64,000 nt of DNA from IMGVR_UViG_3300032116_000001:248001-312000; one strand, 5' to 3'. Counted from the stretch's first letter, positions 17,424-47,632 are shown. Translations and numbers: made by a program. Notes: generated by a model not told the origin, from the sequence alone.

Positions 17424-19862
17424 TTGCCTAATTTCGTTATAATACCACCAAGATTAATAGTTGGTAGTTCTGTTGGCACTGATGTTGTAACGTCAGTGAA
17501 CGGGGTTCGTGGCGATTTAATATTTTCGGCTACAGATGGCTTACAACTTGGCTTGTCAGGCAAAACTTTCACTCTTTCTGTCATACCAAACACATATGTT
17601 TTAAAATCTGGGGACACATTTACTGGGAATCTTCAATTTGTTCCGACTGGTGGAGCCTATGGGCTCAGGCTGCACACGTCCACCACCGATCCATCCCAAA
17701 GTGCTGAAGGTGCCGCATACGTCAACACATCTGATGGAACTCTTAAAATTTATCTTGGCGGGTCTTGGCTGGATGTGGGGCAAATGGGGTCTCTTACCGA
17801 GGCACAAGCAGACCTCAGGTACTTAAAACTTGATGGCAGCAACGATCCTATCACTGGGGATATCTCCATGGGTGTTGCCACGCTTAGATTTGGGAATAAA
17901 GCAGGAGACCCTGTTTCTGGTTCTGCGGGAGACGTGTATTTCAACACAAGTCTTAACAAATTAAGGCTTCACAATGGCTCTGCATGGGTGGACGTGGGTT
18001 CGTCAGGCGTCACAAGTATTTCTTCTGGCAATGGCCTTGCAGCTTCTCCCAGCAGCCCCATTACTTCTACTGGAACTCTTTCTGTAGACCAGGCTTATAA
18101 TTTTAACTGGACGGGAGCACACACATTTTCTCAAGCGATCAGTTTTGCCAGCGGCCAAACATTTGATGCGTCAAAACTAACTATAGGAAGTCAGGCTACT
18201 GGCGACATTTTATATTACTCAGGGTCGGCTTGGAGCAGGCTCGCCATTGGGTCAAGCGGCGAAGTTTTAACAGTTGTGAGTGGCGCACCACAATGGGAGC
18301 CTGCGCTTGGAGGACAAATTGGTACGCCATCTGATGGGGTTTATAGTGATGGCTTTTTTGATTCTTGGACATCATCAACTGATGTATCTAACGCCTTTGA
18401 CGACGTAAATGAATTACTTAAAGATATCGCTCCAGTCAAAGCTGGCTTACTTACAGGTAATGCACTTACTCAAATTTCCATGCCTACATTTTACTCTGTT
18501 AAGCTTTCATCAGGCTTAACAGCAGATTGGTATCCATCTGGTGTGGCAGCAGGTGACACGATCAATACTTATTACTTAAGTGGCAATATTGAGCTTACTT
18601 CTCCCTCTGCTTCTAGCGCTTTTAGAGCAGGCAGAAAATTACAGCCATTAACTTTTGGAAGTGTAAATCATAGAATTCATAACAACACGAACCCATCTGG
18701 TGCCACAGCAGCGACAATTGATCTCACCACAGAACCATCTATACCAGCAACATCTGGGTCCCTAACCGTGACTGATCATGGCATATATAATTCAATTTGG
18801 ATGAAAGCTAATGCAGAAGTTAATTATACTCAAACCGCCGAAGGTTGGGAAGGGCATAGTATTTCGTCCACCGAGGCTGGGGAAACGCTTAGATTAGATG
18901 TGTGGCGCGATACGCACTCTAATTCTAACCCAACTCCGTCTTTTTCTACAAGCCCGACGGCCACTGAGGATACTCCCGTAAATAAATATTTAAGTGGGAT
19001 TAATCACTATGGTTTAAACAGCACTTTTGAAGTTCGATTCGCTGCCGCATCTGGCATATTTAACAGATGTTACAATAGCACACAAGTTGCGAGAATTTCT
19101 GGCACTGGAATGCCAAATCTGAATTTAAATCCAGGATCAACGCCGAATTATCTTGACGCTTATGATCGAACAGGGGTGAATTTTGCCCTGGCCACATTAA
19201 GTACATCCAATTCGGCATCACCGAACAAATATTTAACAGTTACTATTTATAAGGCACATGGTGCGTCTGCTTCATCAAACGCATCTATAAACAGGCCCAT
19301 TTGTACATACGGAACAGTATCCACAAATACATCTGACGTGTTTATGGACGAGGCTCAAAGATTGGTAATAGGCACAACGACTTCCTGGACTTCTTCTTCG
19401 GCACTAAGCAACGGAAATGCGCAGCAAAAAATAACAGGCACAAATGTATCATCCTTGCAATATCCTGACTCAAGTGATTATCCAGGGTTTACGGGAGATC
19501 AAGAGTACCAAAGATTTATTTACAAAACATCAGCTTCAACAGGAACAATAACATTTGGGACACTTACAGCCGCGCAAATTTCTCCCTATGGCACAGGTGA
19601 TGTTAACATTTTGTTATATTTAGACGATGACGCTGTATGGTTTGACCTCGGTGTTGTTCAGGGTTCTAATAGTAACGATGGAAGTAGTAGGGCCTTGGCA
19701 ATTCCTGTCAGAGTTTCCACAACAACATCGGGCAGTACTGTTGGCTTTTCTTTTGGAACATATACTACAGGACCCACAGGGTCTGGTAATTTGGGTAGAT
19801 ATCGAATTGTAATTATATTCAGAAATAATACTCGGACAATAACTTCACTCACTGGTGCTTAA
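17424..19862 (+). CDS. Virion structural / tail-fibre protein
   Basis: S/T/G-rich 812 aa; VTSVNG..G, DLRYLKLDG, GDILYY..WSRLAIGSSGEVLTV..GAPQW; TTG start with GGAG SD. Confidence 0.8.
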   Translation: MPNFVIIPPRLIVGSSVGTDVVTSVNGVRGDLIFSATDGLQLGLSGKTFTLSVIPNTYVLKSGDTFTGNLQFVPTGGAYGLRLHTSTTDPSQSAEGAAYVNTSDGTLKIYLGGSWLDVGQMGSLTEAQADLRYLKLDGSNDPITGDISMGVATLRFGNKAGDPVSGSAGDVYFNTSLNKLRLHNGSAWVDVGSSGVTSISSGNGLAASPSSPITSTGTLSVDQAYNFNWTGAHTFSQAISFASGQTFDASKLTIGSQATGDILYYSGSAWSRLAIGSSGEVLTVVSGAPQWEPALGGQIGTPSDGVYSDGFFDSWTSSTDVSNAFDDVNELLKDIAPVKAGLLTGNALTQISMPTFYSVKLSSGLTADWYPSGVAAGDTINTYYLSGNIELTSPSASSAFRAGRKLQPLTFGSVNHRIHNNTNPSGATAATIDLTTEPSIPATSGSLTVTDHGIYNSIWMKANAEVNYTQTAEGWEGHSISSTEAGETLRLDVWRDTHSNSNPTPSFSTSPTATEDTPVNKYLSGINHYGLNSTFEVRFAAASGIFNRCYNSTQVARISGTGMPNLNLNPGSTPNYLDAYDRTGVNFALATLSTSNSASPNKYLTVTIYKAHGASASSNASINRPICTYGTVSTNTSDVFMDEAQRLVIGTTTSWTSSSALSNGNAQQKITGTNVSSLQYPDSSDYPGFTGDQEYQRFIYKTSASTGTITFGTLTAAQISPYGTGDVNILLYLDDDAVWFDLGVVQGSNSNDGSSRALAIPVRVSTTTSGSTVGFSFGTYTTGPTGSGNLGRYRIVIIFRNNTRTITSLTGA

Positions 19863-19866
19863 TTTT

Positions 19867-22800
19867 ATGCCTTGGAACGAAACAGATATTGCTTTTAAGA
19901 AGCTTAATAACAAAAGAGTAACCACTAATCTTGGAAAGGGGATTAATGAAGAACGCGGCGCAAAAACCATCAATGTGAGTGCTGATGAAATTTGGACAGA
20001 TAGTGTTCCTGGTGTGCCGCCTGGATCAACCACATCTGTAATTGAAGTCTATGATTATGCCGATAGACTTACTTTGATAGAAGACCTATCAGTTCCTAAT
20101 CAACAAGCATGGTTTGCGACGACAATCACAAATACTGTGACTGCTAACAACGGCACAACTTTATCTGAGTCTTCTCGATTAATGGATTGGGTTTCAGATA
20201 AATATGATGCCCCTGGCACGGCCCCTGGTTTAGGCTATGAAATCAAAGTGTATGATAAAGATGACATATTAATTCCAAAGGGAGATGCAAGTCAGTGGTA
20301 CTTTGATTATCAAACTGGTATTCTAATTTTTAGAAATGCAAGCACAGATAGCGGAAGCGTGTCGTCAAGAGCGCCTTTTAAAATAGTAGGTTACAGATAT
20401 ATAGGAAACAAAGGCGCTGGAACAGTTTCTTCTATTGGTGGCAGTAATGGGATTATAACTGATTTAATATCAAATGCACCAATCACTTCATCAGGTAATT
20501 TGCAGCTAGATGTGGCATATTCGCCGTCTTGGTCTAGTAGACATACCTTTAGTTATAATCCAACATCAGGCGTTAGCACTAATCATATATTATCAATTAC
20601 TGGTGCGCCTTTTGGACAATCAAGTGGCGCGGCCATCGAAATAGGTGCCACAAGTGCCTTTGATGGATCAACCGCTGGTTTTTTCAATGGAAGTTCTAGT
20701 GGCACATACATTGCGATTAATGCTGCTTCTTCGTACACGGGTGATTTTTTAAATTTTGGCCTTGCCGCGGGCGCTGGCTACAGCGAAAGACTTAAAATTA
20801 GTGGACAAGGCGTCCTTTCTCTTTTAAACCCAGGAGGGGCGTCAGGCCCGCAAATCTTCTTTGGAAATGCTTCTGCTCCAAGCTCTCCGTCTAATGGAGA
20901 CCTTTGGTATACTGGCAGTGCGCTTAATTTTAGATCAAGTGGAACTATATATAATCTTATAGGAAGCACTATAGGCGATCCATTAAGTGGCGGAACTGTG
21001 GGTTCGGTTATTTTCGTGGGATCAGGTAACACATTGTCACAAGATAATGCGAATTTATTTTGGGACGACTCTAATAATCGCCTGGGACTTGGCAATGCTA
21101 CGCCGCAAATGCCGCTAGATGTCAGAACTGGAGCAAGCTCAATTATTAGAGCGTTAAACACGACATCTTCAGGGCTGAATGAGGGCTCGGTAATATCACT
21201 TCACCAAGGCGATGTTGGATTGATCGTTAATGGTAATAGACTTGGTGGTATCATGATGGGAGGGGCTGATGGAGCCAATTATTCATCTCAGCATAATGCA
21301 GCAGCAATACAGGCTTTTGCTGGCCAAACTTGGTCTTTTGGTTCGTCAGAAGGCTCTTATTTAACTTTTGAAACCACGCCATTGGGCTCTGCAAGTCGTG
21401 TTGAACGAATGAGAATTGACGCTGGCCCAATTATTTGGTTTGGTAATGGTGCAGCATCAGCCTCGCCTATTTCAACTACGATATCAGCAACCTCTGGCTT
21501 AGGAACTAATATCGGTGGCGCAAATTTAACCATAAGAAGTGGCTCTGGAACTGGCACTGGCCAAAGTGGAGATATAGTTTTTCAGACAGCTACCCCAGGT
21601 GGATCAGGGTCGGGGGCAAATGCCCACAGCGATAGATTTGTTATTTCTAGCCATGGGGATATAACCATTTATGGCAACACTGGAAATATTTTATGGCATG
21701 CAGATACAAGCAAATTAATTATTGATGGCGACGGTTATTCAGATCATGTTTCTATTAAGCAAGGAGGCGTAACATCAATACAGCTCGGGCATTCATCTTT
21801 GTCAGGTTTGCTGGGCGGAAGAATTTATGGTTCAGGAGAAGAAGCTGGCGGACTCGAAATTTCTTCAGTTAGTTCGATACAATTACTGTCTGGAGTCGAC
21901 CATGGCATAGACATATATCCACCTGGTGTTGGAGCAGGAGAAACTGGCCAGTTGCGCTTTAGAGAGCTTGATGCGAATGGCTCTAATTTCATATCTTTTA
22001 AATCCCCTGACGCAATTGCAAATAATGTCACATATGTTTTACCATCGGCACACCCAAGCACTAACCAAGTGCTCACAGCCTCAAGCATATCTGGCTCAGG
22101 CCCATATGAGGTTGTTTTAAGCTGGGGAACCCCGTCTGGTGGAGGAATTACAAGCTTAAATGGCCAAACAGGAGGAACACAGACATTTGCCAATGATACA
22201 AATGTTACTATTTCTTCATCATCTAATACTCATACTCTTGGATGGACTGGGCAACTTGCAGTGTCTCGTGGCGGCACAGGTGCTGGTACATTTACTTCCA
22301 ACGGTGTTTTACTCGGAAGTGGCACATCGGCAATTACAGCCACGGCGGCGGGGACGTCTAACCAAGTATTGAGAGTTCCTGGAGCGGGTGGCGCTCCCGC
22401 ATTCGGGGCAATTGATATTTCATCAACCGCGGCTGTTACAGGGTCGCTTGCCGTAACCAATGGCGGCACGGGCACGGGGACAGCATTTACAGAAAACAAT
22501 GTTGTTTTCGCTGGATCGTCGGGCGTATATTCACAGAGTAATGCTTTTGCATTTACTTCATCAACAGGACAACTGGCACTTTCGACAACAGGCGCTGCAG
22601 CAGGCGTGCTCATCGGCGGTGATGTCCAGTTATATCGTTCTGGAGCCAATATTCTTGGGATTCCAGACATTGTTGAAATTCGCTCAGCAAATGAATTACG
22701 TTTCAACAACTCTGCTGATACTAAATTCACTTCTTTTGTGCCTGGGTCACAGACGGTCACGATTAACTATACTCTTCCAGCGTCTGCGCCCTCTCTCAAT

Positions 22801-24669
22801 GATGTCTTAAAAGCGACGTCAGTGTCGGGAACTGACCCTGTCACAGTTGCATTGGGATGGGCTGCAGATACTGATACAGGAATTACAAGCCTTAATAGTC
22901 AGACAGGAAACACACAAACGTTTGCAAATGATACAAACGTTACAATTACATCAGGTTCTAACACTCATACACTTGGGTGGAGCGGCCAGCTTTCTGTTGG
23001 CCGCGGTGGAAGTGGTGCGGGAACGTTCACCTCAAATGGTGTCTTGCTCGGGAATGGAGCATCTCCTTTTAATGTGACAGCTGCTGGCACTGCCAACCAA
23101 GTCTTACGAATTCCTGGGGCTGGCGGAGCGCCAGTTTTTGGTGCAATTGATCTTGCACAAGCCGCCGCGGTCACGGGCACACTTGCGGTCGGAAACGGTG
23201 GGACTGGGACTGGAACTGCGTTTACGGCGGGGAGTGTTGTTTTTGCAGGTTCTGGTGGAACATATTCGCAAGACAATGCAAATCTTTTCTGGGATGACAC
23301 AAACGACCGCTTAGGAATAAGAACTAATACACCAGGTGCTACACTTCATATTAACCCGTCAACTGGCTCTCAGGCGTCATGGTTACAAGAAGGTGCTTTC
23401 TTTAGGGTTCAGGCTGGAACAAGAACAAACAACAGCACCGCAACATCTGGAACAGCTACATGGGCAGTGTTTAACTCATTTGCGCAACCAACCTTAGCGG
23501 CCACGAACACTGGCGTCACAACCACAAACGCAGCAACCGTATTTATAGCTAACTCTCCAGCGGCTGGGGCTAATATGACAATTACCAACAGGTATGCTCT
23601 ATGGGTAGACGCTGGTTGGTCAAGATTTAACGGCTCTGTGGGATTGGGCTTGGTCCCAGATGACAACAACATGTTGTTCAGTTTTATTACCACTTCCTCA
23701 AACTTAACTCGACGTGCGATACAGGGCTTAAATTCGGTTACGGGATCAATTACCTCAACATTTCCCGTTGGTATATCAGGAAGAATAGAGATTAATGCTG
23801 CCGCAAACACAATTTCATACGCAGCAGGGCTGTTTGGATCAGCAAGAACACTTTCGGGCCAAAGCGGGACTATTACCGCTCTTTACGGTATGGATTTCGA
23901 TGTATGGCATCAGGGCACCGCAAATATTGGCACCATGGCAGCGTCCAGAGCTTTTGCTACACTAACAAATACATCTAATGGAACCATTACTGATTGGATT
24001 GGCTATTCTGCACAGCTTAATACCTCTGTTGGCGGAAGTGCTTCTGCCACAAATGCATTAGGTTACGATACGATCTTTTCATTAAGCGGATCGGGAACGA
24101 TTGCAAATCTAACAGGCTACCGAATACAAAACCCGTCGGGAAGCCAAACGATAACAAATCTTTATGGCATTCGGATCGCTGACCTAACGCGGGGAACAAA
24201 CAACTTCGGTATCTACTTTGATGGTACATCAGGGCTGGCAAGGCAAGGCATCTGGTGGAATGCTGACACAAATCTTTATCGCTCAGCAGCAAACACACTG
24301 AGAACGGATGATGAACTAGTCGTTGGGCAAAGAGCTACATCAGGCGTTGTCGTGTTGACAGACGGGGCGAATATCTCACTAGATGCCAGTTTGGGCAACC
24401 ACTTCAGGGTGACTTTAGGGGGTAACAGAACACTACTGGCTCCGACAAATCCAGTCGATGGACAAAAGATTACGATTGAAGTCATTCAAGACGGTGGCGG
24501 AAATAGGACATTAACTCTAACCACGGGGAGTAGCGGAAGTTTCATTTTTGGGACAGATATAACAGGAATAACACTTACCACGACTGGTGGCCTGCGCGAT
24601 TTAATCGGATGTGTTTATTCATCATCGCTTAGTCGATGGATGGTTGTGAGTTTTGTCAAGGGATTCTAA
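19867..24669 (+). CDS. Long tail fibre / receptor-binding protein (about 1600 aa)
   Basis: G/S/T-rich; SQDNANLFWDD..RLG twice, ERMRID, large internal duplication, C-terminal DASLGNHFRVTLGGNRTL..PTN..GQ..IQDGGGNRTLT tip domain; ATG at 19867. Confidence 0.9.
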   Translation: MPWNETDIAFKKLNNKRVTTNLGKGINEERGAKTINVSADEIWTDSVPGVPPGSTTSVIEVYDYADRLTLIEDLSVPNQQAWFATTITNTVTANNGTTLSESSRLMDWVSDKYDAPGTAPGLGYEIKVYDKDDILIPKGDASQWYFDYQTGILIFRNASTDSGSVSSRAPFKIVGYRYIGNKGAGTVSSIGGSNGIITDLISNAPITSSGNLQLDVAYSPSWSSRHTFSYNPTSGVSTNHILSITGAPFGQSSGAAIEIGATSAFDGSTAGFFNGSSSGTYIAINAASSYTGDFLNFGLAAGAGYSERLKISGQGVLSLLNPGGASGPQIFFGNASAPSSPSNGDLWYTGSALNFRSSGTIYNLIGSTIGDPLSGGTVGSVIFVGSGNTLSQDNANLFWDDSNNRLGLGNATPQMPLDVRTGASSIIRALNTTSSGLNEGSVISLHQGDVGLIVNGNRLGGIMMGGADGANYSSQHNAAAIQAFAGQTWSFGSSEGSYLTFETTPLGSASRVERMRIDAGPIIWFGNGAASASPISTTISATSGLGTNIGGANLTIRSGSGTGTGQSGDIVFQTATPGGSGSGANAHSDRFVISSHGDITIYGNTGNILWHADTSKLIIDGDGYSDHVSIKQGGVTSIQLGHSSLSGLLGGRIYGSGEEAGGLEISSVSSIQLLSGVDHGIDIYPPGVGAGETGQLRFRELDANGSNFISFKSPDAIANNVTYVLPSAHPSTNQVLTASSISGSGPYEVVLSWGTPSGGGITSLNGQTGGTQTFANDTNVTISSSSNTHTLGWTGQLAVSRGGTGAGTFTSNGVLLGSGTSAITATAAGTSNQVLRVPGAGGAPAFGAIDISSTAAVTGSLAVTNGGTGTGTAFTENNVVFAGSSGVYSQSNAFAFTSSTGQLALSTTGAAAGVLIGGDVQLYRSGANILGIPDIVEIRSANELRFNNSADTKFTSFVPGSQTVTINYTLPASAPSLNDVLKATSVSGTDPVTVALGWAADTDTGITSLNSQTGNTQTFANDTNVTITSGSNTHTLGWSGQLSVGRGGSGAGTFTSNGVLLGNGASPFNVTAAGTANQVLRIPGAGGAPVFGAIDLAQAAAVTGTLAVGNGGTGTGTAFTAGSVVFAGSGGTYSQDNANLFWDDTNDRLGIRTNTPGATLHINPSTGSQASWLQEGAFFRVQAGTRTNNSTATSGTATWAVFNSFAQPTLAATNTGVTTTNAATVFIANSPAAGANMTITNRYALWVDAGWSRFNGSVGLGLVPDDNNMLFSFITTSSNLTRRAIQGLNSVTGSITSTFPVGISGRIEINAAANTISYAAGLFGSARTLSGQSGTITALYGMDFDVWHQGTANIGTMAASRAFATLTNTSNGTITDWIGYSAQLNTSVGGSASATNALGYDTIFSLSGSGTIANLTGYRIQNPSGSQTITNLYGIRIADLTRGTNNFGIYFDGTSGLARQGIWWNADTNLYRSAANTLRTDDELVVGQRATSGVVVLTDGANISLDASLGNHFRVTLGGNRTLLAPTNPVDGQKITIEVIQDGGGNRTLTLTTGSSGSFIFGTDITGITLTTTGGLRDLIGCVYSSSLSRWMVVSFVKGF
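22144..23271 (+). repeat. Internal duplication in the tail fibre (two copies of about 130 aa, 735 nt apart)
   Basis: GITSLNxQTGxTQTFANDTNVTI...GTGTGTAFT..VVFAGS.G.YSQ at about 22144-22536 and 22879-23271. Confidence 0.9.
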
Positions 24670-41604: not shown

Positions 41605-42504
41605 ATGATGTTTAATACGAAGCGGTTTTTGGTGACGGGCGGAGCAGGCTTTATAGGCACGCAACTTATAAAGCATCTGCTCAATAAATACGAAGACTGT
41701 GTTATACTTTCAGTTGATAATTATTTCACAGGCCTTATTGAAAACCATATCACAGACCCAAGAGTTACTTACTTGGCATGCTGCACGACAGAGATAAATC
41801 AAAATGCGTCTACTGTAAATTTCAGCCCCGATATTGTTTTTCATCTAGGTGAATTCAGTCGAATAGTTAAAAGTTTTGACGATATTGAAGAATGTCATAA
41901 ATTTAACATGGCTGGAACTTTTCAGGTGCTTCTCTATTGCCGAAAAACTAATGCTCGTTTAGTTTATGCAGCTTCTTCATCAAAATTTGGCAACAATGGC
42001 GAAGACCAGCACTTATCCCCTTATGCCTGGATGAAAGCCAAAAATATAGAACTTATAAATAATTGGCATCATTGGTATGGGCTTGATTTCGTAATCACAT
42101 ATTTTTATAATGTATATGGTCCTGGTCAAATTATGAGCGGAGATTATGCTGCTGTGATCGGAAGATTTCAGCAGCAAGTTATTGACAATCAGCCGATCAC
42201 TGTGGTTGCCCCTGGAACTCAAAGGCGAGATTTTACCAACGTTGAAGATATTGTCCGAGGCATTGTTCTCGCCGCAGAAAAAGGATCAGGCGATGGATAT
42301 TTACTTGGAACAGGTAAAAACTATACTCTTTTAGAAATTGCCGAAGCTTTTGATCATCCTTATATGATAATTCCAGAGCGCAAAGGCGAAAGATTTTCTG
42401 GACAAGCATATCCATCAAAAGCCGAAGAAGAGCTTGGGTGGGTTGCGGAACATAATATCATTGAATACATTAAAAACTGGAAAAAAGAATTCACAAAGCC
42501 ATAA
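41605..42504 (+). CDS. NAD-dependent nucleotide-sugar epimerase/dehydratase
   Basis: TGGAGFIG, SPYAWMK, YNVYGP, GTQRRDF. Confidence 0.92.
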   Translation: MMFNTKRFLVTGGAGFIGTQLIKHLLNKYEDCVILSVDNYFTGLIENHITDPRVTYLACCTTEINQNASTVNFSPDIVFHLGEFSRIVKSFDDIEECHKFNMAGTFQVLLYCRKTNARLVYAASSSKFGNNGEDQHLSPYAWMKAKNIELINNWHHWYGLDFVITYFYNVYGPGQIMSGDYAAVIGRFQQQVIDNQPITVVAPGTQRRDFTNVEDIVRGIVLAAEKGSGDGYLLGTGKNYTLLEIAEAFDHPYMIIPERKGERFSGQAYPSKAEEELGWVAEHNIIEYIKNWKKEFTKP

Positions 42505-42573
42505 TTAATATGAACACTATGTTTGTTTTATCTGTATAAGTTCAATTAGTTCTTAAACAGAAGGAATTACTAA

Positions 42574-44217
<1,644 letters not shown>

Positions 44218-44240
44218 TTGTTGTATAACAATATTTGACT

Positions 44241-44274
44241 CAAGAGGACAAACTAAATTTAGTTTGTCCTCTTG
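44241..44274. repeat. Perfect 34-bp palindrome after groL (terminator or operator)
   Basis: CAAGAGGACAAACTAAA|TTTAGTTTGTCCTCTTG. Confidence 0.85.
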
Positions 44275-44302
44275 GCTTTGAAAATATCCCAGGTAAACAT
44301 AT

Positions 44303-45178
44303 ATGAAGAAAGCCTTTACGCTCATCGAACTTCTTGTTGTTATCGCAATTATTGCTATTTTAGCTGCGATTCTTTTCCCCGTCTTTTCTCAGGCCAAGCT
44401 TGCCGCCAAGAAAACTGTTGGTTTAACCCAAGTTAAACAGATTGGAACATCAATGCAGCTGTATGTCGGCGATTATGATGACATGCTGTTTCCGTACCGA
44501 CTTAATGGTACACAAAACCCCGATTATGCCCGCGCCATTGCTGCTCGGGGGCAGGCGTATGCCGATAGCGTTGTAGGAACTAGTGCAAGAAATGTTATTT
44601 TCTTTAACCAGCTTCTGCAACCATATATGAAAAATAATGATATTTTCAAGGCACCTACCAAGCCAAATGCCTGGGCTGGCGTTGATACTTTCGGTTCTGA
44701 CACTGAACCTGCATTCCGATCTTACGGCGGACAAAACAGCTATGGTGTTAACAATTATGTGTTTACATCTCAGGCGGGCACGTCATCAATCGGCGGGGGG
44801 CTTAATATGGGCGAAATAGCAGAACCAAGCAATACTTTGATTATGGTTGATGCAAGCTATTATAATGTTCTTCCCCGATTCGTTGGAAGACTTAATGGAT
44901 ACACTGGCACATTTAATGTGTGCAGCAGCAGTTACCCGTTGTATTGGAAGAATCTCGGCAACTCCTATCTCTTTAGATGGAATGGTGGACCAAACACGCC
45001 ATCTGACGCTGAAGCTCTGCGATTGATTAATAACCGATATAATGGACCATTGAATATGGTTCAGGGCGACACTAGTTCAAGAGCCGTTGCAGCTAATGCA
45101 ATTCTGAACAACCTGAGAGATCGGGGCGCAGAATCATTTTGGGACCCATACAAACTCGGCAACACTCCATGTCCGTAA
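44303..45178 (+). CDS. Prepilin-type N-terminal cleavage/methylation domain protein (DUF1559-like)
   Basis: [35 protein letters not shown]...Y..DYDD, PYMKN, SYG.N. Confidence 0.92.
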
Positions 45179-45207
45179 TGCAACAAAACTGCATTATATA
45201 ACGTATA

Positions 45208-45243
45208 ATAATTGGCTCAACTGATTGTAGTTGGGCCAATTAT
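45208..45243. terminator. 15-bp hairpin between the two pilin-like genes
   Basis: ATAATTGGCTCAACT-N6-AGTTGGGCCAATTAT (one G-U pair). Confidence 0.6.
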
Positions 45244-45255
45244 ATTAGAATTATT

Positions 45256-46017
45256 ATGAGACAGGCTTTTACACTTATTGAATTACTTGTTGTGATCGCA
45301 ATTATCGCGGTTTTGGCTGCAATCCTTTTCCCAGTTTTTTCACAAGCAAAGGAAGCTGCCAAGAAAACTCAGTCGATTTCCAACATGCGCCAACTTGGTA
45401 TTTCCTGGCAGCTTTACAATACTGACTACGATGATACCTTAATGAGAGTTTCTGTGCCTGATGAGCATGGTGTGGTTTATTGGTGGGGATGTTGGGAAGA
45501 AGACGAACAAGAACTTAGAGTTGAGGAAGGCCTTTTATATCCTTATACTCGAAACAATGGTATTTACAAGGATTCATCTTTTAATGCTCAAGTTACGGGA
45601 AGTATGAATTTCTCTGGGTATGGATATAATTATGCTTATTTGAGTCCGTCAACTTATTCTCCTCCGAACTGGGAAGAAAATCCCATTCCCGTAAATGCTT
45701 CATCGATTGAGTTTCCATCTGAGACAGTCGCTTTTGCATCAAATGCGAGACTAAATACATGGGCTTATGACAATCCTGTTTTAGAGGGCACGGGATACTT
45801 AGAGCCACCTTCTTTCGATTTCCCAACATTTCAGGGCCGACACAATAAGCATGGCGTAGTACTTTGGTCTGACGGGCATGCCAAGGCGCAAAAGCCTATT
45901 TTGAGGACTGGGGACTTCGGCTGGGGATATAACGGGGCTCAGTTTGCCCCATATAATCTTGGGGAAATAGATAAAGATGGTAATCTTTCAACTGATGAAC
46001 TTTTTGATTTAGAGTGA
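45256..46017 (+). CDS. Prepilin-type N-terminal cleavage/methylation protein with C-terminal H-X9-DG motif
   Basis: [16 protein letters not shown]...QAKEAAKKT; GYGYN; [16 protein letters not shown]. Confidence 0.92.
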
Positions 46018-46064
46018 ATTTGCAACAGGTGTTGATCAACAAACGTAGAATAATAAAACACTAC

Positions 46065-46422
46065 GGGGGCATAAGGGATCGATTGACGTTGCTATCTTAT
46101 GTTTGCAAGGCGCGGATGTATCCTTGGCCGCGATAACAAAGGATGCAAAAAGTAAATGCGGAAAACAACTTCGCTTTCGCTGCTTAATTAAGCTGGCGCA
46201 TGAACCTGAGACGAGTCTGTAGTTAATGGGGATTGTAAAATAAATCAGACTTAGCTTTGAAACTTCGGCTTGTAGTTGAAAAAGCGATATTAATCAAGCT
46301 GCTGTCAAGAAAGTGCTGGCCTCTAGCCAAAGCTTGACTTAAGATTAATATGAGGAGAACCTTGTGGCGAGCATAGGCTCTGTACGGACAACAAGCGGGT
46401 TCAAATCCCGCTGCCTCCACCA
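46065..46422 (+). ncRNA. ssrA: tmRNA with tag (A)AENNFAFAA
   Basis: 5' GGGGGCA pairs with 3' TGCCTCC-ACCA including the G3-U Ala determinant; T-arm GCGGG-TTCAAAT-CCCGC; resume codon GCG at 46158, TAA at 46185-46187. Confidence 0.95.
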
Positions 46423-46427
46423 ATTTT

Positions 46428-46461
46428 GCAGTATGATTTTTTCATACTGCTTTTATTTTTT
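46428..46461 (+). terminator. Intrinsic terminator after the tmRNA
   Basis: GCAGTATGA-TTTTT-TCATACTGC followed by TTTTATTTTTT. Confidence 0.85.
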
Positions 46462-46617
46462 GGGCGGACTCAACTTAAACATGCCCACAGGGGCTTTTTT
46501 AATAAAATGCTGAGCAGCCAAAAGTGAATAGAATTTTTTAATATCTCCTGCTTTAAATTTGACTCCGCTATAAACTCCAGGCCGACTGCATTCTACATAA
46601 AAAACTTTTCGGTTCAT
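46453..46617 (-). CDS. Small hypothetical protein (54 aa, MNRKVFYVECSRPG...)
   Basis: Manually read ORF that fills the gap between the tmRNA and the tRNAs. Confidence 0.45.
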   Translation of the reverse strand: MNRKVFYVECSRPGVYSGVKFKAGDIKKFYSLLAAQHFIKKAPVGMFKLSPPKK

Positions 46618-46691
46618 ATGATTTTTTTTGGGTTTTTAGTCCCAAATTGCCTACTTTTTATTTAAAAATACGTATTATAATTATATTGCTT

Positions 46692-46762
46692 GCTCCATTA
46701 GCTCAATGGTAGAGCTGGGGTCTCTAAAACCTTGGTCGCGGGTTCGATTCCCGTGTGGAGCA
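46692..46762 (+). tRNA. tRNA with CUA anticodon (amber suppressor) no. 1; CCA not encoded
   Basis: Acceptor GCTCCAT/GTGGAGC, D-arm GCTC..GAGC, anticodon arm GGGGT-CTCTAAA-ACCTT (CTA at 46724-46726), T-arm GCGGG-TTCGATT-CCCGT, A73. Confidence 0.85.
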
Positions 46763-46783
46763 GACAATATATTAAAAATACGC

Positions 46784-46858
46784 GCTCTAGTAACTCAGTG
46801 GTAGAGTGGCCCTCTCTAAAAGGGCATGTCGCGGGTTCGAGTCCCGCCTAGAGCGCCA
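46784..46858 (+). tRNA. tRNA with CUA anticodon (amber suppressor) no. 2
   Basis: Acceptor GCTCTAG/CTAGAGC, D-arm ACTC..GAGT, anticodon arm GCCCT-CTCTAAA-AGGGC (CTA at 46816-46818), T-arm GCGGG-TTCGAGT-CCCGC, G73-CCA. Confidence 0.93.
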
Positions 46859-46882
46859 AGGTTTCTAAAACAATACAGAGTC

Positions 46883-47098
46883 ATGTCAAACAAAAACAAT
46901 TATCAAGAATCTGATCAACCAGACGGCGTATTTCTTAAAGGGGTCATGTATGGGGCCGTCATAAGCATTTTTATTTTAATTATAGCAAAGGCCTTATCAT
47001 TGATTTTGAGCCTAAATATATTTGCCAGCTTGGGCATTTCCGTGCTTGCTATTTTCTTAATTGCTTTATTTTTTGAAATTTTTCGGAAAAGATGCTAA
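46883..47098 (+). CDS. Small membrane protein (2 TM segments)
   Basis: MSNKNNYQ... followed by two hydrophobic helices; start moved downstream of the tRNA. Confidence 0.7.
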   Translation: MSNKNNYQESDQPDGVFLKGVMYGAVISIFILIIAKALSLILSLNIFASLGISVLAIFLIALFFEIFRKRC

Positions 47099-47115
47099 CT
47101 TTTTTGTTGAAAAGC

Positions 47116-47140
47116 AGGTATTAAAGATATAACACGAGAA
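47116..47140 (+). promoter_or_regulatory. Putative late promoter AGG-N18-AGAA upstream of the leader/tRNA-Lys unit
   Basis: Exact spacing match to the six other copies. Confidence 0.5.
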
Positions 47141-47155
47141 TTAAGGTAATTCAAA

Positions 47156-47197
47156 ATGAGACACAACATTCTTAAACGCAAACCTAAACATTACTAG
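47156..47197 (+). CDS. Putative leader peptide MRHNILKRKPKHY-amber
   Basis: TAAGGT SD 8 nt upstream; three AAA codons; TAG stop; lies within alternative hairpins. Confidence 0.6.
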   Translation: MRHNILKRKPKHY

Positions 47198-47314
47198 GTT
47201 CTAGTTCTTTCCGAGGCTAGAATCTGGCCTCTTTGCGTATGTGTCTGCAAATCAAAAGTTATTTTTAACTTTTCCTGCGATCAGAAAACCTTCGGGGCCA
47301 AAACTTTAAATTTT

Positions 47315-47390
47315 GGGTCAGTAGCTCAGTTGGTAGAGCAGCGGTCTTTTAAACCGCGGGTCGCGGGTTCGAGCCCCGCCTGGCCCACCA
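47315..47390 (+). tRNA. tRNA-Lys(UUU)
   Basis: GGGTCAG/CTGGCCC-ACCA; anticodon arm GCGGT-CTTTTAA-ACCGC. Confidence 0.96.
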
Positions 47391-47401
47391 GAATTTTTCA
47401 T

Positions 47402-47477
47402 GGAGGGATAGCTCAGTCGGTAGAGCAGCTGACTCTTAATCAGCATGTCGTGGGTTCGATCCCCACTCCCTTCACCA
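47402..47477 (+). tRNA. tRNA-Lys(CUU)
   Basis: GGAGGGA/TCCCTTC-ACCA; anticodon arm GCTGA-CTCTTAA-TCAGC. Confidence 0.96.
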
Positions 47478-47482
47478 ATATA

Positions 47483-47590
47483 TGGTGTTCTGGTACAAGT
47501 GGATTAACTCTGCGCCACAGGAAAAAGACGATGGAAAAACCCATCCATATTTGCAGAGATGTTCAGGCTCGTCCCCTGATAATTTCATCA
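47483..47590 (+). ncRNA. tRNA-like structured element or pseudo-tRNA
   Basis: D-loop-like AAGTGGATTAA, CTCTGC/GCAGAG stem enclosing a GATGG/CCATC hairpin, T-arm-like TCAGG-CTCGTCC-CCTGA. Confidence 0.35.
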
Positions 47591-47632
47591 AGATTGATTT
47601 ATTTTATTGGGCAAATTAACGGCTCAATTAAA

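What the first reader, a model, noticed from the sequence alone, without database searches (positions are those of the whole stretch)
44303..46017. Two host-type pilin-like (DUF1559/H-X9-DG) genes in a phage; host clue and possible receptor interference
The N-terminus [32 protein letters not shown] is typical of the expanded family in Armatimonadota (Fimbriimonas-like); Planctomycetes versions read LLPAVQ.AREAARR. Phage carriage could alter or block host pili (superinfection exclusion) or change substrate capture. Phages of this phylum are poorly characterised.
Basis: partly seen in the sequence, partly recalled or inferred. Interest (0 to 1): 0.6.

Follow-up and report, generated by a model that had tools for sequence, protein, structure and literature searches.

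The report
Host-derived pilin-like genes in huge phage
A 379-kb freshwater phage carries two intact, selectively maintained copies of pilin-like surface-filament genes taken from Fimbriimonadaceae (Armatimonadota) bacteria, which names its likely host and suggests the phage re-equips the host's filaments, most plausibly to keep rival phages out.

Summary
Two ORFs, P1 (44303-45178, 291 aa) and P2 (45256-46017, 253 aa), encode prepilin-type proteins inside a real 378,848-bp phage that has a major head protein, 34 tRNAs and a tmRNA. It is not a misassembly: the same gene order recurs on more than 24 independent contigs, and the genes have phage-like GC (0.42-0.45, against 0.47-0.63 at bacterial orthologue loci).

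Full-length homologues are Fimbriimonadaceae proteins at up to 62-73% identity, against 33-38% in five PVC-group genomes. GroEL (weakly) and the tmRNA tag point the same way.

The family label is only half right. P2 has an intact H-X9-DG motif and a DUF1559-like fold but scores below the Pfam cut-off. P1 lacks the motif and has no DUF1559 hit.

Each gene matches a single-copy host orthogroup. P2 copies form one phage clade that sits beside GroEL in relatives of GC 0.41-0.55, under strong purifying selection, with fixed changes in two segments. Other huge phages captured similar genes independently.

The phage has no prepilin peptidase or assembly ATPase, so its proteins must use host machinery. 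Function is untested. The best guess is subunit replacement that causes superinfection exclusion, as shown for prophage P-FimU. Maintenance of a host function is the main rival.

The parts
44303..45178 (+). P1: prepilin-type protein, 291 aa. It has a class III signal (A-1, F+1, E+5) and two conserved Cys (C207, C290), and lacks H-X9-DG. It is a near-faithful copy of a single-copy Fimbriimonadaceae orthogroup.
45256..46017 (+). P2: prepilin-type protein, 253 aa. It has a class III signal, an intact H-X9-DG motif (H196-D206-G207) and a conserved acidic C-terminal motif (I-D-K-D-G-N...T-D-E-L-F-D-L). Its fold is DUF1559-like. Phage-clade-specific changes lie at residues 79-84 and 104-120.
44240..44275 (+). 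16-bp hairpin between GroEL and P1. Its lower-stem sequence also occurs upstream of P1 in the relative L139, with differences in the upper stem.
45208..45243 (+). 16-bp hairpin ending 12 nt before the P2 start codon. A strong hairpin occupies the same position in relatives L139 and L140.
42577..44217 (+). Phage GroEL, the conserved upstream neighbour of P2 in related phages
46065..46422 (+). tmRNA directly downstream of P2 (tag AENNFAFAA), followed by a terminator-like hairpin at 46428-46450

Best explanation
P1 and P2 are type-IV-filament subunit (pilin/pseudopilin-like) genes that huge phages captured from Fimbriimonadaceae hosts and have kept functional. In an infected cell the pre-proteins would insert into the inner membrane. 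The host's single prepilin peptidase would cut them between A-1 and F+1. One of the host's several type IV pilus/type II secretion-like machines would then assemble them, because the phage encodes neither a peptidase nor an assembly ATPase. There they would replace or dilute the host's own single-copy orthologues. The most likely consequence is superinfection exclusion: an altered filament surface, since P2 has phage-specific fixed changes in two segments, that other filament-binding phages, or progeny of the same phage, can no longer use. This is the mechanism demonstrated for prophage-encoded FimU. Shown here: gene integrity, host origin, phage residence, purifying selection, recurrent capture, and dependence on host machinery. 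Inferred: processing, assembly and the exclusion phenotype.
For: Pilin nature: N_methyl and TIGR02532 pass their cut-offs. AF2 models (pLDDT 85 and 84) show a 50-residue N-terminal helix followed by strands. For P2, the top ~22 VIA-align rows are almost all type IV pilins or pseudopilins. The P2 Atlas model matches a PF07596 cluster at TM 0.90. Host origin: homologues are Fimbriimonadaceae proteins at up to 73% (P1) and 62% (P2), against 33-38% in five PVC genomes. Maintained in phage: phage-like GC/GC3. pN is 0.09-0.15 with synonymous sites saturated, and dN/dS is 0.05 for the one unsaturated pair. 110 of 137 (P2) and 101 of 107 (P1) columns conserved in bacteria are kept. P2 copies form one phage clade (SH-aLRT 100) and are syntenic with GroEL in relatives of GC 0.41-0.55. 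Specific target: each gene matches a single-copy orthogroup (28 and 62 of 121 family genomes). Independent capture by a GC-0.31 huge-phage lineage. Dependence on the host: the phage has no Peptidase_A24 and no T2SSE above cut-off, while the candidate hosts examined each have 1 peptidase match, 8-11 T2SSE-family ATPase matches and 3-10 secretin matches. Surface change: fixed phage-specific substitutions at bacterial near-invariant positions (R114T, G118N) and a 2-aa acidic insert. Precedent: PMC12952977.
Against: There is no experimental or expression evidence. The only RNA trace is one 166-nt contig inside P1 in a metatranscriptome, which may be DNA carry-over. P1 differs from the bacterial consensus at only one conserved column (A29S), which suits a faithful functional copy better than an altered receptor. 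The biological role of DUF1559-type proteins is unknown in any organism. Nothing shows that they form an external filament or serve as phage receptors. The genes sit among host-maintenance-type genes (GroEL, tmRNA, tRNAs, NAD synthase). No integrase was found, so any exclusion would act during lytic infection rather than from a prophage.
Confidence: 0.45

Rival explanations
1. Auxiliary, host-maintenance role. The phage supplies extra copies of two specific host pseudopilin-like subunits to keep or boost a type II secretion/type IV filament-dependent function (secretion, polymer capture or uptake, adhesion) during the long infection cycle of a huge phage, much as its GroEL, tmRNA, tRNAs and NAD synthase do for other functions.
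For: P1 is almost unchanged at conserved positions. Both genes match single-copy host orthogroups. Their neighbours are host-like housekeeping genes. Purifying selection is strong. Two DUF1559 paralogues are essential in Planctopirus limnophila (PMC10632474).
Against: The host already has these genes, and structural filament subunits are not an obvious bottleneck for phage production. The P2 phage clade has a long stem (0.44 substitutions per site) and fixed changes at positions invariant in bacteria, which suggests altered rather than identical function. Bacterial P2 orthologues have no conserved neighbourhood that points to a pathway.
Confidence: 0.3
2. Interference role. The phage subunits poison or cap host filaments, or titrate the prepilin peptidase, to shut down pilus-dependent motility, DNA uptake or secretion. 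The aim would be something other than phage exclusion, for example stopping uptake of competing DNA or retaining resources.
For: The phage-specific loop changes, acidic insert and an unpaired Cys (S79C) in P2. Truncated PilA-like genes in virulent Pseudomonas phages have been proposed to act in this way.
Against: Both proteins are full length and keep nearly all assembly-relevant invariant residues. There is no direct evidence.
Confidence: 0.15
3. Neutral passenger genes, or an assembly chimera of host DNA in a phage bin.
For: The family is hugely expanded in the host phylum (18-99+ matches per genome), so chance capture is plausible.
Against: The same junctions occur on more than 24 contigs from several samples and in independent runs. 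Base composition is ameliorated. Synteny is conserved across diverged phages. dN/dS is far below 1. Capture is recurrent.
Confidence: 0.03

Closest known systems
Prophage-encoded FimU (P-FimU) of Pseudomonas aeruginosa F10-like phages, and the PilA-like genes of Xylella prophages and some virulent phages (PMC12952977)
   Same: Both are phage-borne homologues of a host type IV filament subunit. Both depend on host processing and assembly. Both diverge from the host copy while keeping the assembly-competent N-terminus.
   Different: The present genes belong to the uncharacterised DUF1559-like branch, not to FimU or PilA. They sit in a ~379-kb phage with no integrase detected, whose predicted host is in Armatimonadota. 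Two different subunits are carried. No phenotype has been tested.
DUF1559 / H-X9-DG prepilin-type paralogue families of Planctomycetota, Verrucomicrobiota, Lentisphaerota and Armatimonadota (PF07596; 68 paralogues in Planctopirus limnophila, PMC10632474)
   Same: The class III signal peptide is the same. P2 has the H-X9-DG motif and a predicted fold at TM 0.90 to a Planctomycetota PF07596 cluster. The host family holds tens of paralogues per genome.
   Different: P2 scores below the Pfam gathering threshold. P1 lacks the motif and the Pfam hit. These copies are phage-encoded. Each belongs to a single-copy orthogroup rather than to a lineage-specific burst.
Major pseudopilins and pilins with solved structures (Thermus PilA4 6xxd, Vibrio EpsG 4lw9, Klebsiella PulG 5wda)
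   Same: A long N-terminal helix packed on a beta-sheet (VIA-align Z 5.2, 4.1 and 3.5). The acidic C-terminal motif recalls the calcium site of GspG (my recollection, not tested).
   Different: The globular part is about twice as large, with extra strands. Similarity is weak (Z no higher than 5.2, and no Foldseek hit at E below 0.001).
Host-like translation and chaperone genes of huge phages (Al-Shayeb et al. 2020, PMC7162821)
   Same: The genomic setting is the same: tmRNA, many tRNAs and a chaperonin.
   Different: The main text of that paper contains none of the words pilin, pilus, pili or secretion.

Membership tests
Type IV filament subunits (type IV pilins / pseudopilins) | Class III signal peptide: a short basic leader, G/A at -1, F at +1, E at +5, and a hydrophobic helix of about 20 residues | tested here: met
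   PF07963 scores 30.3 and 28.9 bits (cut-off 21.2). TIGR02532 scores 31.6 and 30.2 bits (cut-off 16.3). F5, E9 and the hydrophobic stretch are invariant in the alignments.
Type IV filament subunits (type IV pilins / pseudopilins) | A long N-terminal alpha-helix packed against an antiparallel beta-sheet | tested here: met
   AF2 models have pLDDT 85 and 84, with helix 7-57 followed by strands. For P2, the VIA-align top rows are almost all pilins or pseudopilins, but Z is only 5.2 or lower, and Foldseek against the PDB gives weak pilin top hits only. P1 was searched with Foldseek only.
Type IV filament subunits (type IV pilins / pseudopilins) | Cleavage and N-methylation by a prepilin peptidase, and assembly by a T2SSE-type ATPase machine | not testable with these tools
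   The phage lacks both. Five Fimbriimonadaceae genomes each have 1 peptidase match, 8-11 ATPase matches and 3-10 secretin matches.
DUF1559 (Pfam PF07596, SBP_bac_10) | Score at or above the Pfam gathering threshold (23.3 bits) | tested here: not met
   P2 scores 15.8 bits, on residues 30-59 only. P1 has no hit. 33 of 36 P2 orthologues and 3 of 30 P1 orthologues hit at E<=1.
DUF1559 (Pfam PF07596, SBP_bac_10) | The same predicted fold as bona fide members | tested here: met
   The P2 Atlas model aligns at TM 0.90 over 250 residues to a cluster whose members all carry PF07596. P1 aligns at TM 0.68 to an Armatimonadota cluster in which 53% of members carry PF07596.
H-X9-DG prepilin-associated domain | A C-terminal His, nine residues, then Asp-Gly | tested here: met
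   For P2: H196-(9 residues)-D206-G207, conserved across its alignment. For P1 the feature is NOT met: it has R245-(10 residues)-D256-T257. No NCBIfam H-X9-DG model appeared at E<=0.01 for either protein.
Phage-encoded filament-subunit replacement for anti-phage defence (P-FimU type) | A phage-encoded homologue of a host filament structural subunit | tested here: met
Phage-encoded filament-subunit replacement for anti-phage defence (P-FimU type) | Incorporation into the host filament, and a block on adsorption of filament-binding phages | not testable with these tools
   This needs expression in a host and adsorption assays. The only indirect hint is the set of phage-specific changes in two P2 segments.

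The most novel reading that the evidence does not exclude
Several lineages of huge phages have independently captured members of the same few single-copy prepilin orthogroups. This could mean that DUF1559-type proteins sit at the exposed end of a surface filament that these phages use as a receptor. The enormous paralogue expansions of this family in Armatimonadota and the PVC phyla could then be driven, at least in part, by a phage-host and phage-phage arms race over that receptor. That would give a first functional handle on one of the largest uncharacterised bacterial protein families.
Probability: 0.12. Interest if true: 0.8.

Novelty: new variant of a known kind. Interest (0 to 1): 0.55.

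Why it matters
First, it gives a concrete, multiply supported host assignment (Fimbriimonadaceae, Armatimonadota) for a widespread freshwater huge phage. My one paper search on phages of this phylum (terms Armatimonadota, phage, pilin) found nothing relevant. Second, it extends the recently demonstrated idea that phages carry their own versions of host pilus subunits. The extension covers the large, functionally unknown DUF1559/H-X9-DG family, lytic-type huge phages, and repeated independent captures. Third, phage copies that are conserved, single and traceable to single-copy host orthologues offer a tractable way to find out what this protein family does.

Tried and rejected
- tblastn of P1 against 50,697 GenBank phage records found no match.
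- Foldseek against the PDB gave no hit at E<=0.001 for either model. VIA-align was needed.
It served only to obtain genome handles.
- No gene cluster recurred in three or more of the ten 18-kb loci around bacterial P2 orthologues.
- P1 and P2 orthologues are not adjacent in the bacterial loci examined. Neighbouring pilin-like genes match only at the N-terminus.
- Genome-wide TAG recoding, suggested by the two tRNA-CUA genes, is rejected. Coding density is 0.912 under code 11 and 0.918 with TAG as sense. A suspected TAG-containing giant ORF is intact under code 11.
- Pfam Terminase_6C and Phage_integrase found nothing in the phage.
- Paper searches for DUF1559, H-X9-DG, Armatimonadota+phage+pilin, 'huge phages'+pilin and phage-encoded+pseudopilin found no description of such phage genes.

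Full report
**What is there**

The window is bases 248001-312000 of a 378,848-bp IMG/VR virus record that CheckV rates as complete.
- P1: 44303..45178 +, 291 aa.
- P2: 45256..46017 +, 253 aa.

Both pass Pfam N_methyl (30.3 and 28.9 bits, cut-off 21.2) and NCBIfam TIGR02532. Each begins with a four-residue basic leader. After it come A at -1, F at +1, E at +5 and a hydrophobic helix of about 20 residues.

The record is a phage:
- It has a major head protein (phrog_2522, E 6.7e-66, at genome 139986-140840).
- It has typical phage replication genes.
- It has 34 tRNAs and a tmRNA.
- No tyrosine integrase was found.

The genome holds exactly two prepilin-type genes. It has no prepilin peptidase and no T2SSE-family ATPase above cut-off.

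**Not an artefact**

- A protein identical to P1 is encoded on at least 24 contigs from several JGI and ENA samples. Every place shown, as far as its contig reaches, has the order ligase, epimerase, GroEL, P1, P2, then NAD synthase.
- The stretch occurs near-identically in 19 DNA runs from at least 11 studies, mostly labelled freshwater metagenomes. Contigs of independent runs bridge P1, P2 and the tmRNA.
- The genes have GC 0.447 and 0.420 in a genome of 0.406. Loci of bacterial orthologues have GC 0.47-0.63. GC3 is 0.41 and 0.35, against 0.81 for the closest bacterial P1 homologue.

A recent chimera of host DNA would not look like this.

**Where the genes come from**

Both proteins have thousands of full-length homologues.

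- For P1, the closest homologue seen in a clearly bacterial context is 73% identical. It lies in a chromosomal neighbourhood (HSP20, NamZ, ECF sigma, HtrA-like, other prepilin genes) of GC 0.63.
- Almost every hit that carries an organism name is Fimbriimonadaceae, Fimbriimonas or Armatimonadetes. Two are labelled Chlorobia and one simply 'bacterium'.
- In 121 species-representative genomes of that family, P1 has an orthologue (E<=1e-50, up to 67% identity) in 28. It is nearly always single copy.
- P2 has an orthologue in 62 of the 121, always single copy, at up to 62% identity. Only about 20 candidates per genome were scored, so these counts are lower bounds.
- The wider family is strongly expanded: 18 to 99 or more matches per Armatimonadota genome.
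- As a control, five genomes of Verrucomicrobiota, Lentisphaerota and Planctomycetota give at best 33-38% identity to P2 (E 1e-17 to 1e-27).

Two independent markers agree with this host assignment:
- The phage tmRNA tag (AENNFAFAA) has the same nine-residue length and pattern as the tags of five Fimbriimonadaceae genomes (ANTNYAYAA, ANNNYAYAA, ANNNYAFAA, ADNNFAYAA). The RNAs themselves are only 53-56% identical.
- After the phage relatives, the only GroEL hit among the best 120 that carries an organism name is Fimbriimonadaceae, at 56%.

**What kind of protein**

- AlphaFold2 models are confident: P2 has pLDDT 85 and pTM 0.81, and P1 has pLDDT 84 and pTM 0.79. Both show a helix spanning residues 7-57 followed by a beta-rich domain.
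- Foldseek finds nothing significant in the PDB, although the top rows are pilins.
- An exhaustive VIA-align search with P2 returns almost only type IV pilins and pseudopilins in its first 22 rows. These include Thermus PilA4 (Z 5.2), EpsG (4.1) and PulG (3.5). The Z-scores are weak but the pattern is consistent.
- The ESM Atlas model of P2 aligns at TM 0.90 to a Planctomycetota cluster whose members all carry PF07596. P1 aligns at TM 0.68 to an Armatimonadota 'PulG family' cluster.

Family membership is only partial:
- P2 has the H-X9-DG motif (H196 to D206-G207), which is conserved across its orthologues. It scores only 15.8 bits on PF07596, below the 23.3 cut-off, although 33 of 36 orthologues hit at E<=1.
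- P1 has R-X10-D-T at the equivalent place and no PF07596 hit.

P2 is therefore a peripheral DUF1559/H-X9-DG protein. P1 belongs to a sister subfamily.

**Evidence that the phage keeps them for a purpose**

1. *Synteny.* Related phages carry P2 in the same place.
   - A 30.9-kb contig has ligase, epimerase, a GIY-YIG endonuclease, GroEL, two small ORFs, then a P2 homologue (75% identity). It has no P1.
   - Two contigs of GC 0.55 have epimerase (81% identity), GroEL (71%), one small ORF, P2 (81%) and SIR2, again without P1.
   - A 3.2-kb contig has P1 (86%) and P2 (79%) adjacent.
2. *Phylogeny.* The four P2 copies on these phage or phage-like contigs form one clade (SH-aLRT 100) on a long stem (0.44 substitutions per site) among bacterial homologues. 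The two P1 copies form a clade (99) inside a supported group that contains the 73% bacterial homologue. Both are quick trees with midpoint rooting.
3. *Selection.* Between the window and its relatives, synonymous sites are saturated (pS 0.87-0.96) while pN is 0.09-0.15. The one unsaturated pair gives dN/dS 0.05.
4. *Residue conservation.* All phage copies keep 110 of 137 (P2) and 101 of 107 (P1) columns that are at least 80% conserved in bacteria.
5. *Recurrent capture.* A distinct set of huge-phage contigs (up to 358 kb, GC about 0.31) carries other H-X9-DG prepilin genes. Their 299-aa type is 50% identical to a Fimbriimonas protein and has no match at E<=1e-25 in four PVC genomes. It groups with that bacterial protein (96), apart from the window's P1 clade. 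Capture has therefore happened more than once.

**Phage-specific changes**

P1 differs from the bacterial consensus at a single conserved column (A29S). P2 has 14 positions where all four phage copies depart from the conserved bacterial state, 11 of them in two segments:
- Residues 79-84: S79C, G82E/A and a two-residue acidic insertion.
- Residues 104-120: Q104Y, P107S, L113V, R114T, G118N and T120S.

R114 and G118 are invariant among the 117 homologues compared, and part of the second segment (residues 111-120) has the lowest model confidence. I could not compute solvent exposure, so 'surface loop' is an inference.

**How it most likely works**

The phage lacks a peptidase and an assembly ATPase. 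The five candidate host genomes examined each have one Peptidase_A24 match, 8-11 T2SSE-family ATPase matches and 3-10 secretin matches. The phage proteins can therefore only act through host machinery. They would be cleaved at A|F, extracted from the inner membrane and polymerised into, or onto the tip of, a host type IV filament or pseudopilus. There they would compete with the single-copy host orthologue.

What this achieves is not shown. I rank the options as follows:
- *Subunit replacement causing superinfection exclusion, about 0.45.* The mechanism has been demonstrated experimentally for prophage FimU homologues. Those are incorporated into the Pseudomonas pilus without impairing it, and they block phages that bind the tip. 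The same paper notes PilA-like genes in virulent phages (PMC12952977). The P2 loop changes fit an altered binding surface.
- *Auxiliary maintenance of a secretion or uptake function, about 0.3.* This is favoured by the almost unchanged P1 and by the housekeeping-type neighbours.
- *Filament poisoning for another purpose, about 0.15.*
- *Neutral passenger, about 0.03.* The evidence above effectively excludes this.

**Regulatory context**

Stable 16-bp hairpins lie at 44240-44275 (between GroEL and P1) and at 45208-45243 (12 nt before the P2 start). Their z-scores are -5.9 and -5.3.
- The first recurs upstream of P1 in L139, with the same lower stem and differences in the upper stem.
- A strong hairpin also precedes P2 in L139 and L140.
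- A clean terminator-like element follows the tmRNA at 46428-46450.
- No convincing Shine-Dalgarno sequence precedes P2.

I did not test whether the hairpins terminate transcription, stabilise mRNA or regulate translation.

**Expression**

One metatranscriptomic run contains a 166-nt contig identical to 44989-45141, inside P1. It shows nothing over GroEL or P2. This is a hint at best, because DNA carry-over cannot be excluded.

**Literature**

DUF1559 is mentioned only as a large paralogous family of unknown function. Planctopirus limnophila has 68 paralogues, two of them essential (PMC10632474). I found no paper describing such genes in phages. The main text of the huge-phage survey contains none of the words pilin, pilus, pili or secretion.

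**Verdict**

The family label is half right, and the functional proposal is plausible but untested. I class it as a new variant of a known kind: phage-encoded filament subunits, here of the DUF1559-like family, in huge phages with predicted Armatimonadota hosts, with recurrent capture. Interest is moderate at 0.55.

Noticed in passing
window 46065-46422: Phage tmRNA (Rfam 91.3 bits) directly after P2. Its 9-residue tag AENNFAFAA mirrors the 9-residue tags of Fimbriimonadaceae tmRNAs, although nucleotide identity is only 53-56%.
   Followed up: partly
window 46691-46763 and 46784-46858: Two tRNAs with anticodon CUA (amber suppressors; ARAGORN labels them 'Pyl'). [quoted passage not shown] The genome shows no sign of TAG recoding (coding density 0.912 against 0.918), and TAG is the rarest stop (43 of 412 ORFs). 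Their role is unexplained.
   Followed up: partly
window 42577-44217: Phage GroEL. Its nearest relatives are phage homologues (68-71%), then a large group of 536-539-aa GroELs on short, unnamed contigs (57-62%) that may be a phage-borne GroEL clade. Bacterial Fimbriimonadaceae GroEL is at 56%.
   Followed up: partly
L139, L140, L141, L137 versus the window: Syntenic relatives of this phage differ greatly in base composition (GC 0.49-0.55 against 0.41) while keeping the epimerase, GroEL and P2 module at 71-81% amino-acid identity.
   Followed up: partly
L003-L019 (IMG/VR contigs up to 358 kb, GC about 0.31): A second group of huge-phage contigs carries other H-X9-DG prepilin genes (299-aa and 322-aa types). 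The 299-aa type groups with Fimbriimonas proteins, which implies independent capture and probably the same host phylum. They share a few proteins with the window's phage.
   Followed up: partly
L022 (166-kb IMG/VR contig, GC 0.407): A probable relative of the window's phage (its homologue of the major head protein is 74% identical) carries a different, very divergent prepilin-like gene (325 aa) at another locus.
   Followed up: no
30.9-kb contig carrying P0123 (no DNA held): In this relative a GIY-YIG homing-type endonuclease sits between epimerase and GroEL. A short RF-1-like gene (196 aa, PCRF + RF-1) and a FeoA gene lie between P2 and NAD synthase. These genes were not called at that place in the window's phage.
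   Followed up: no
window 19855-24669: A 1604-aa ORF coincides with a local GC rise (0.48 at 22001-24000, against about 0.40 around it). Its only PHROG hit is an unknown-function family on the first 200 residues.
   Followed up: no
window 44989-45141: A metatranscriptome run (X20) holds one 166-nt contig identical to this part of P1 and nothing elsewhere in 42400-47600, apart from a tRNA-like piece.
   Followed up: partly
window 47272-47445: Contig depth in DNA runs jumps about 50-fold over the two tRNA-Lys genes, with many loose ends. This indicates that near-identical tRNA sequences occur in many other organisms in the same samples. It explains why contigs break there and is not a feature of the phage.
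   Followed up: no
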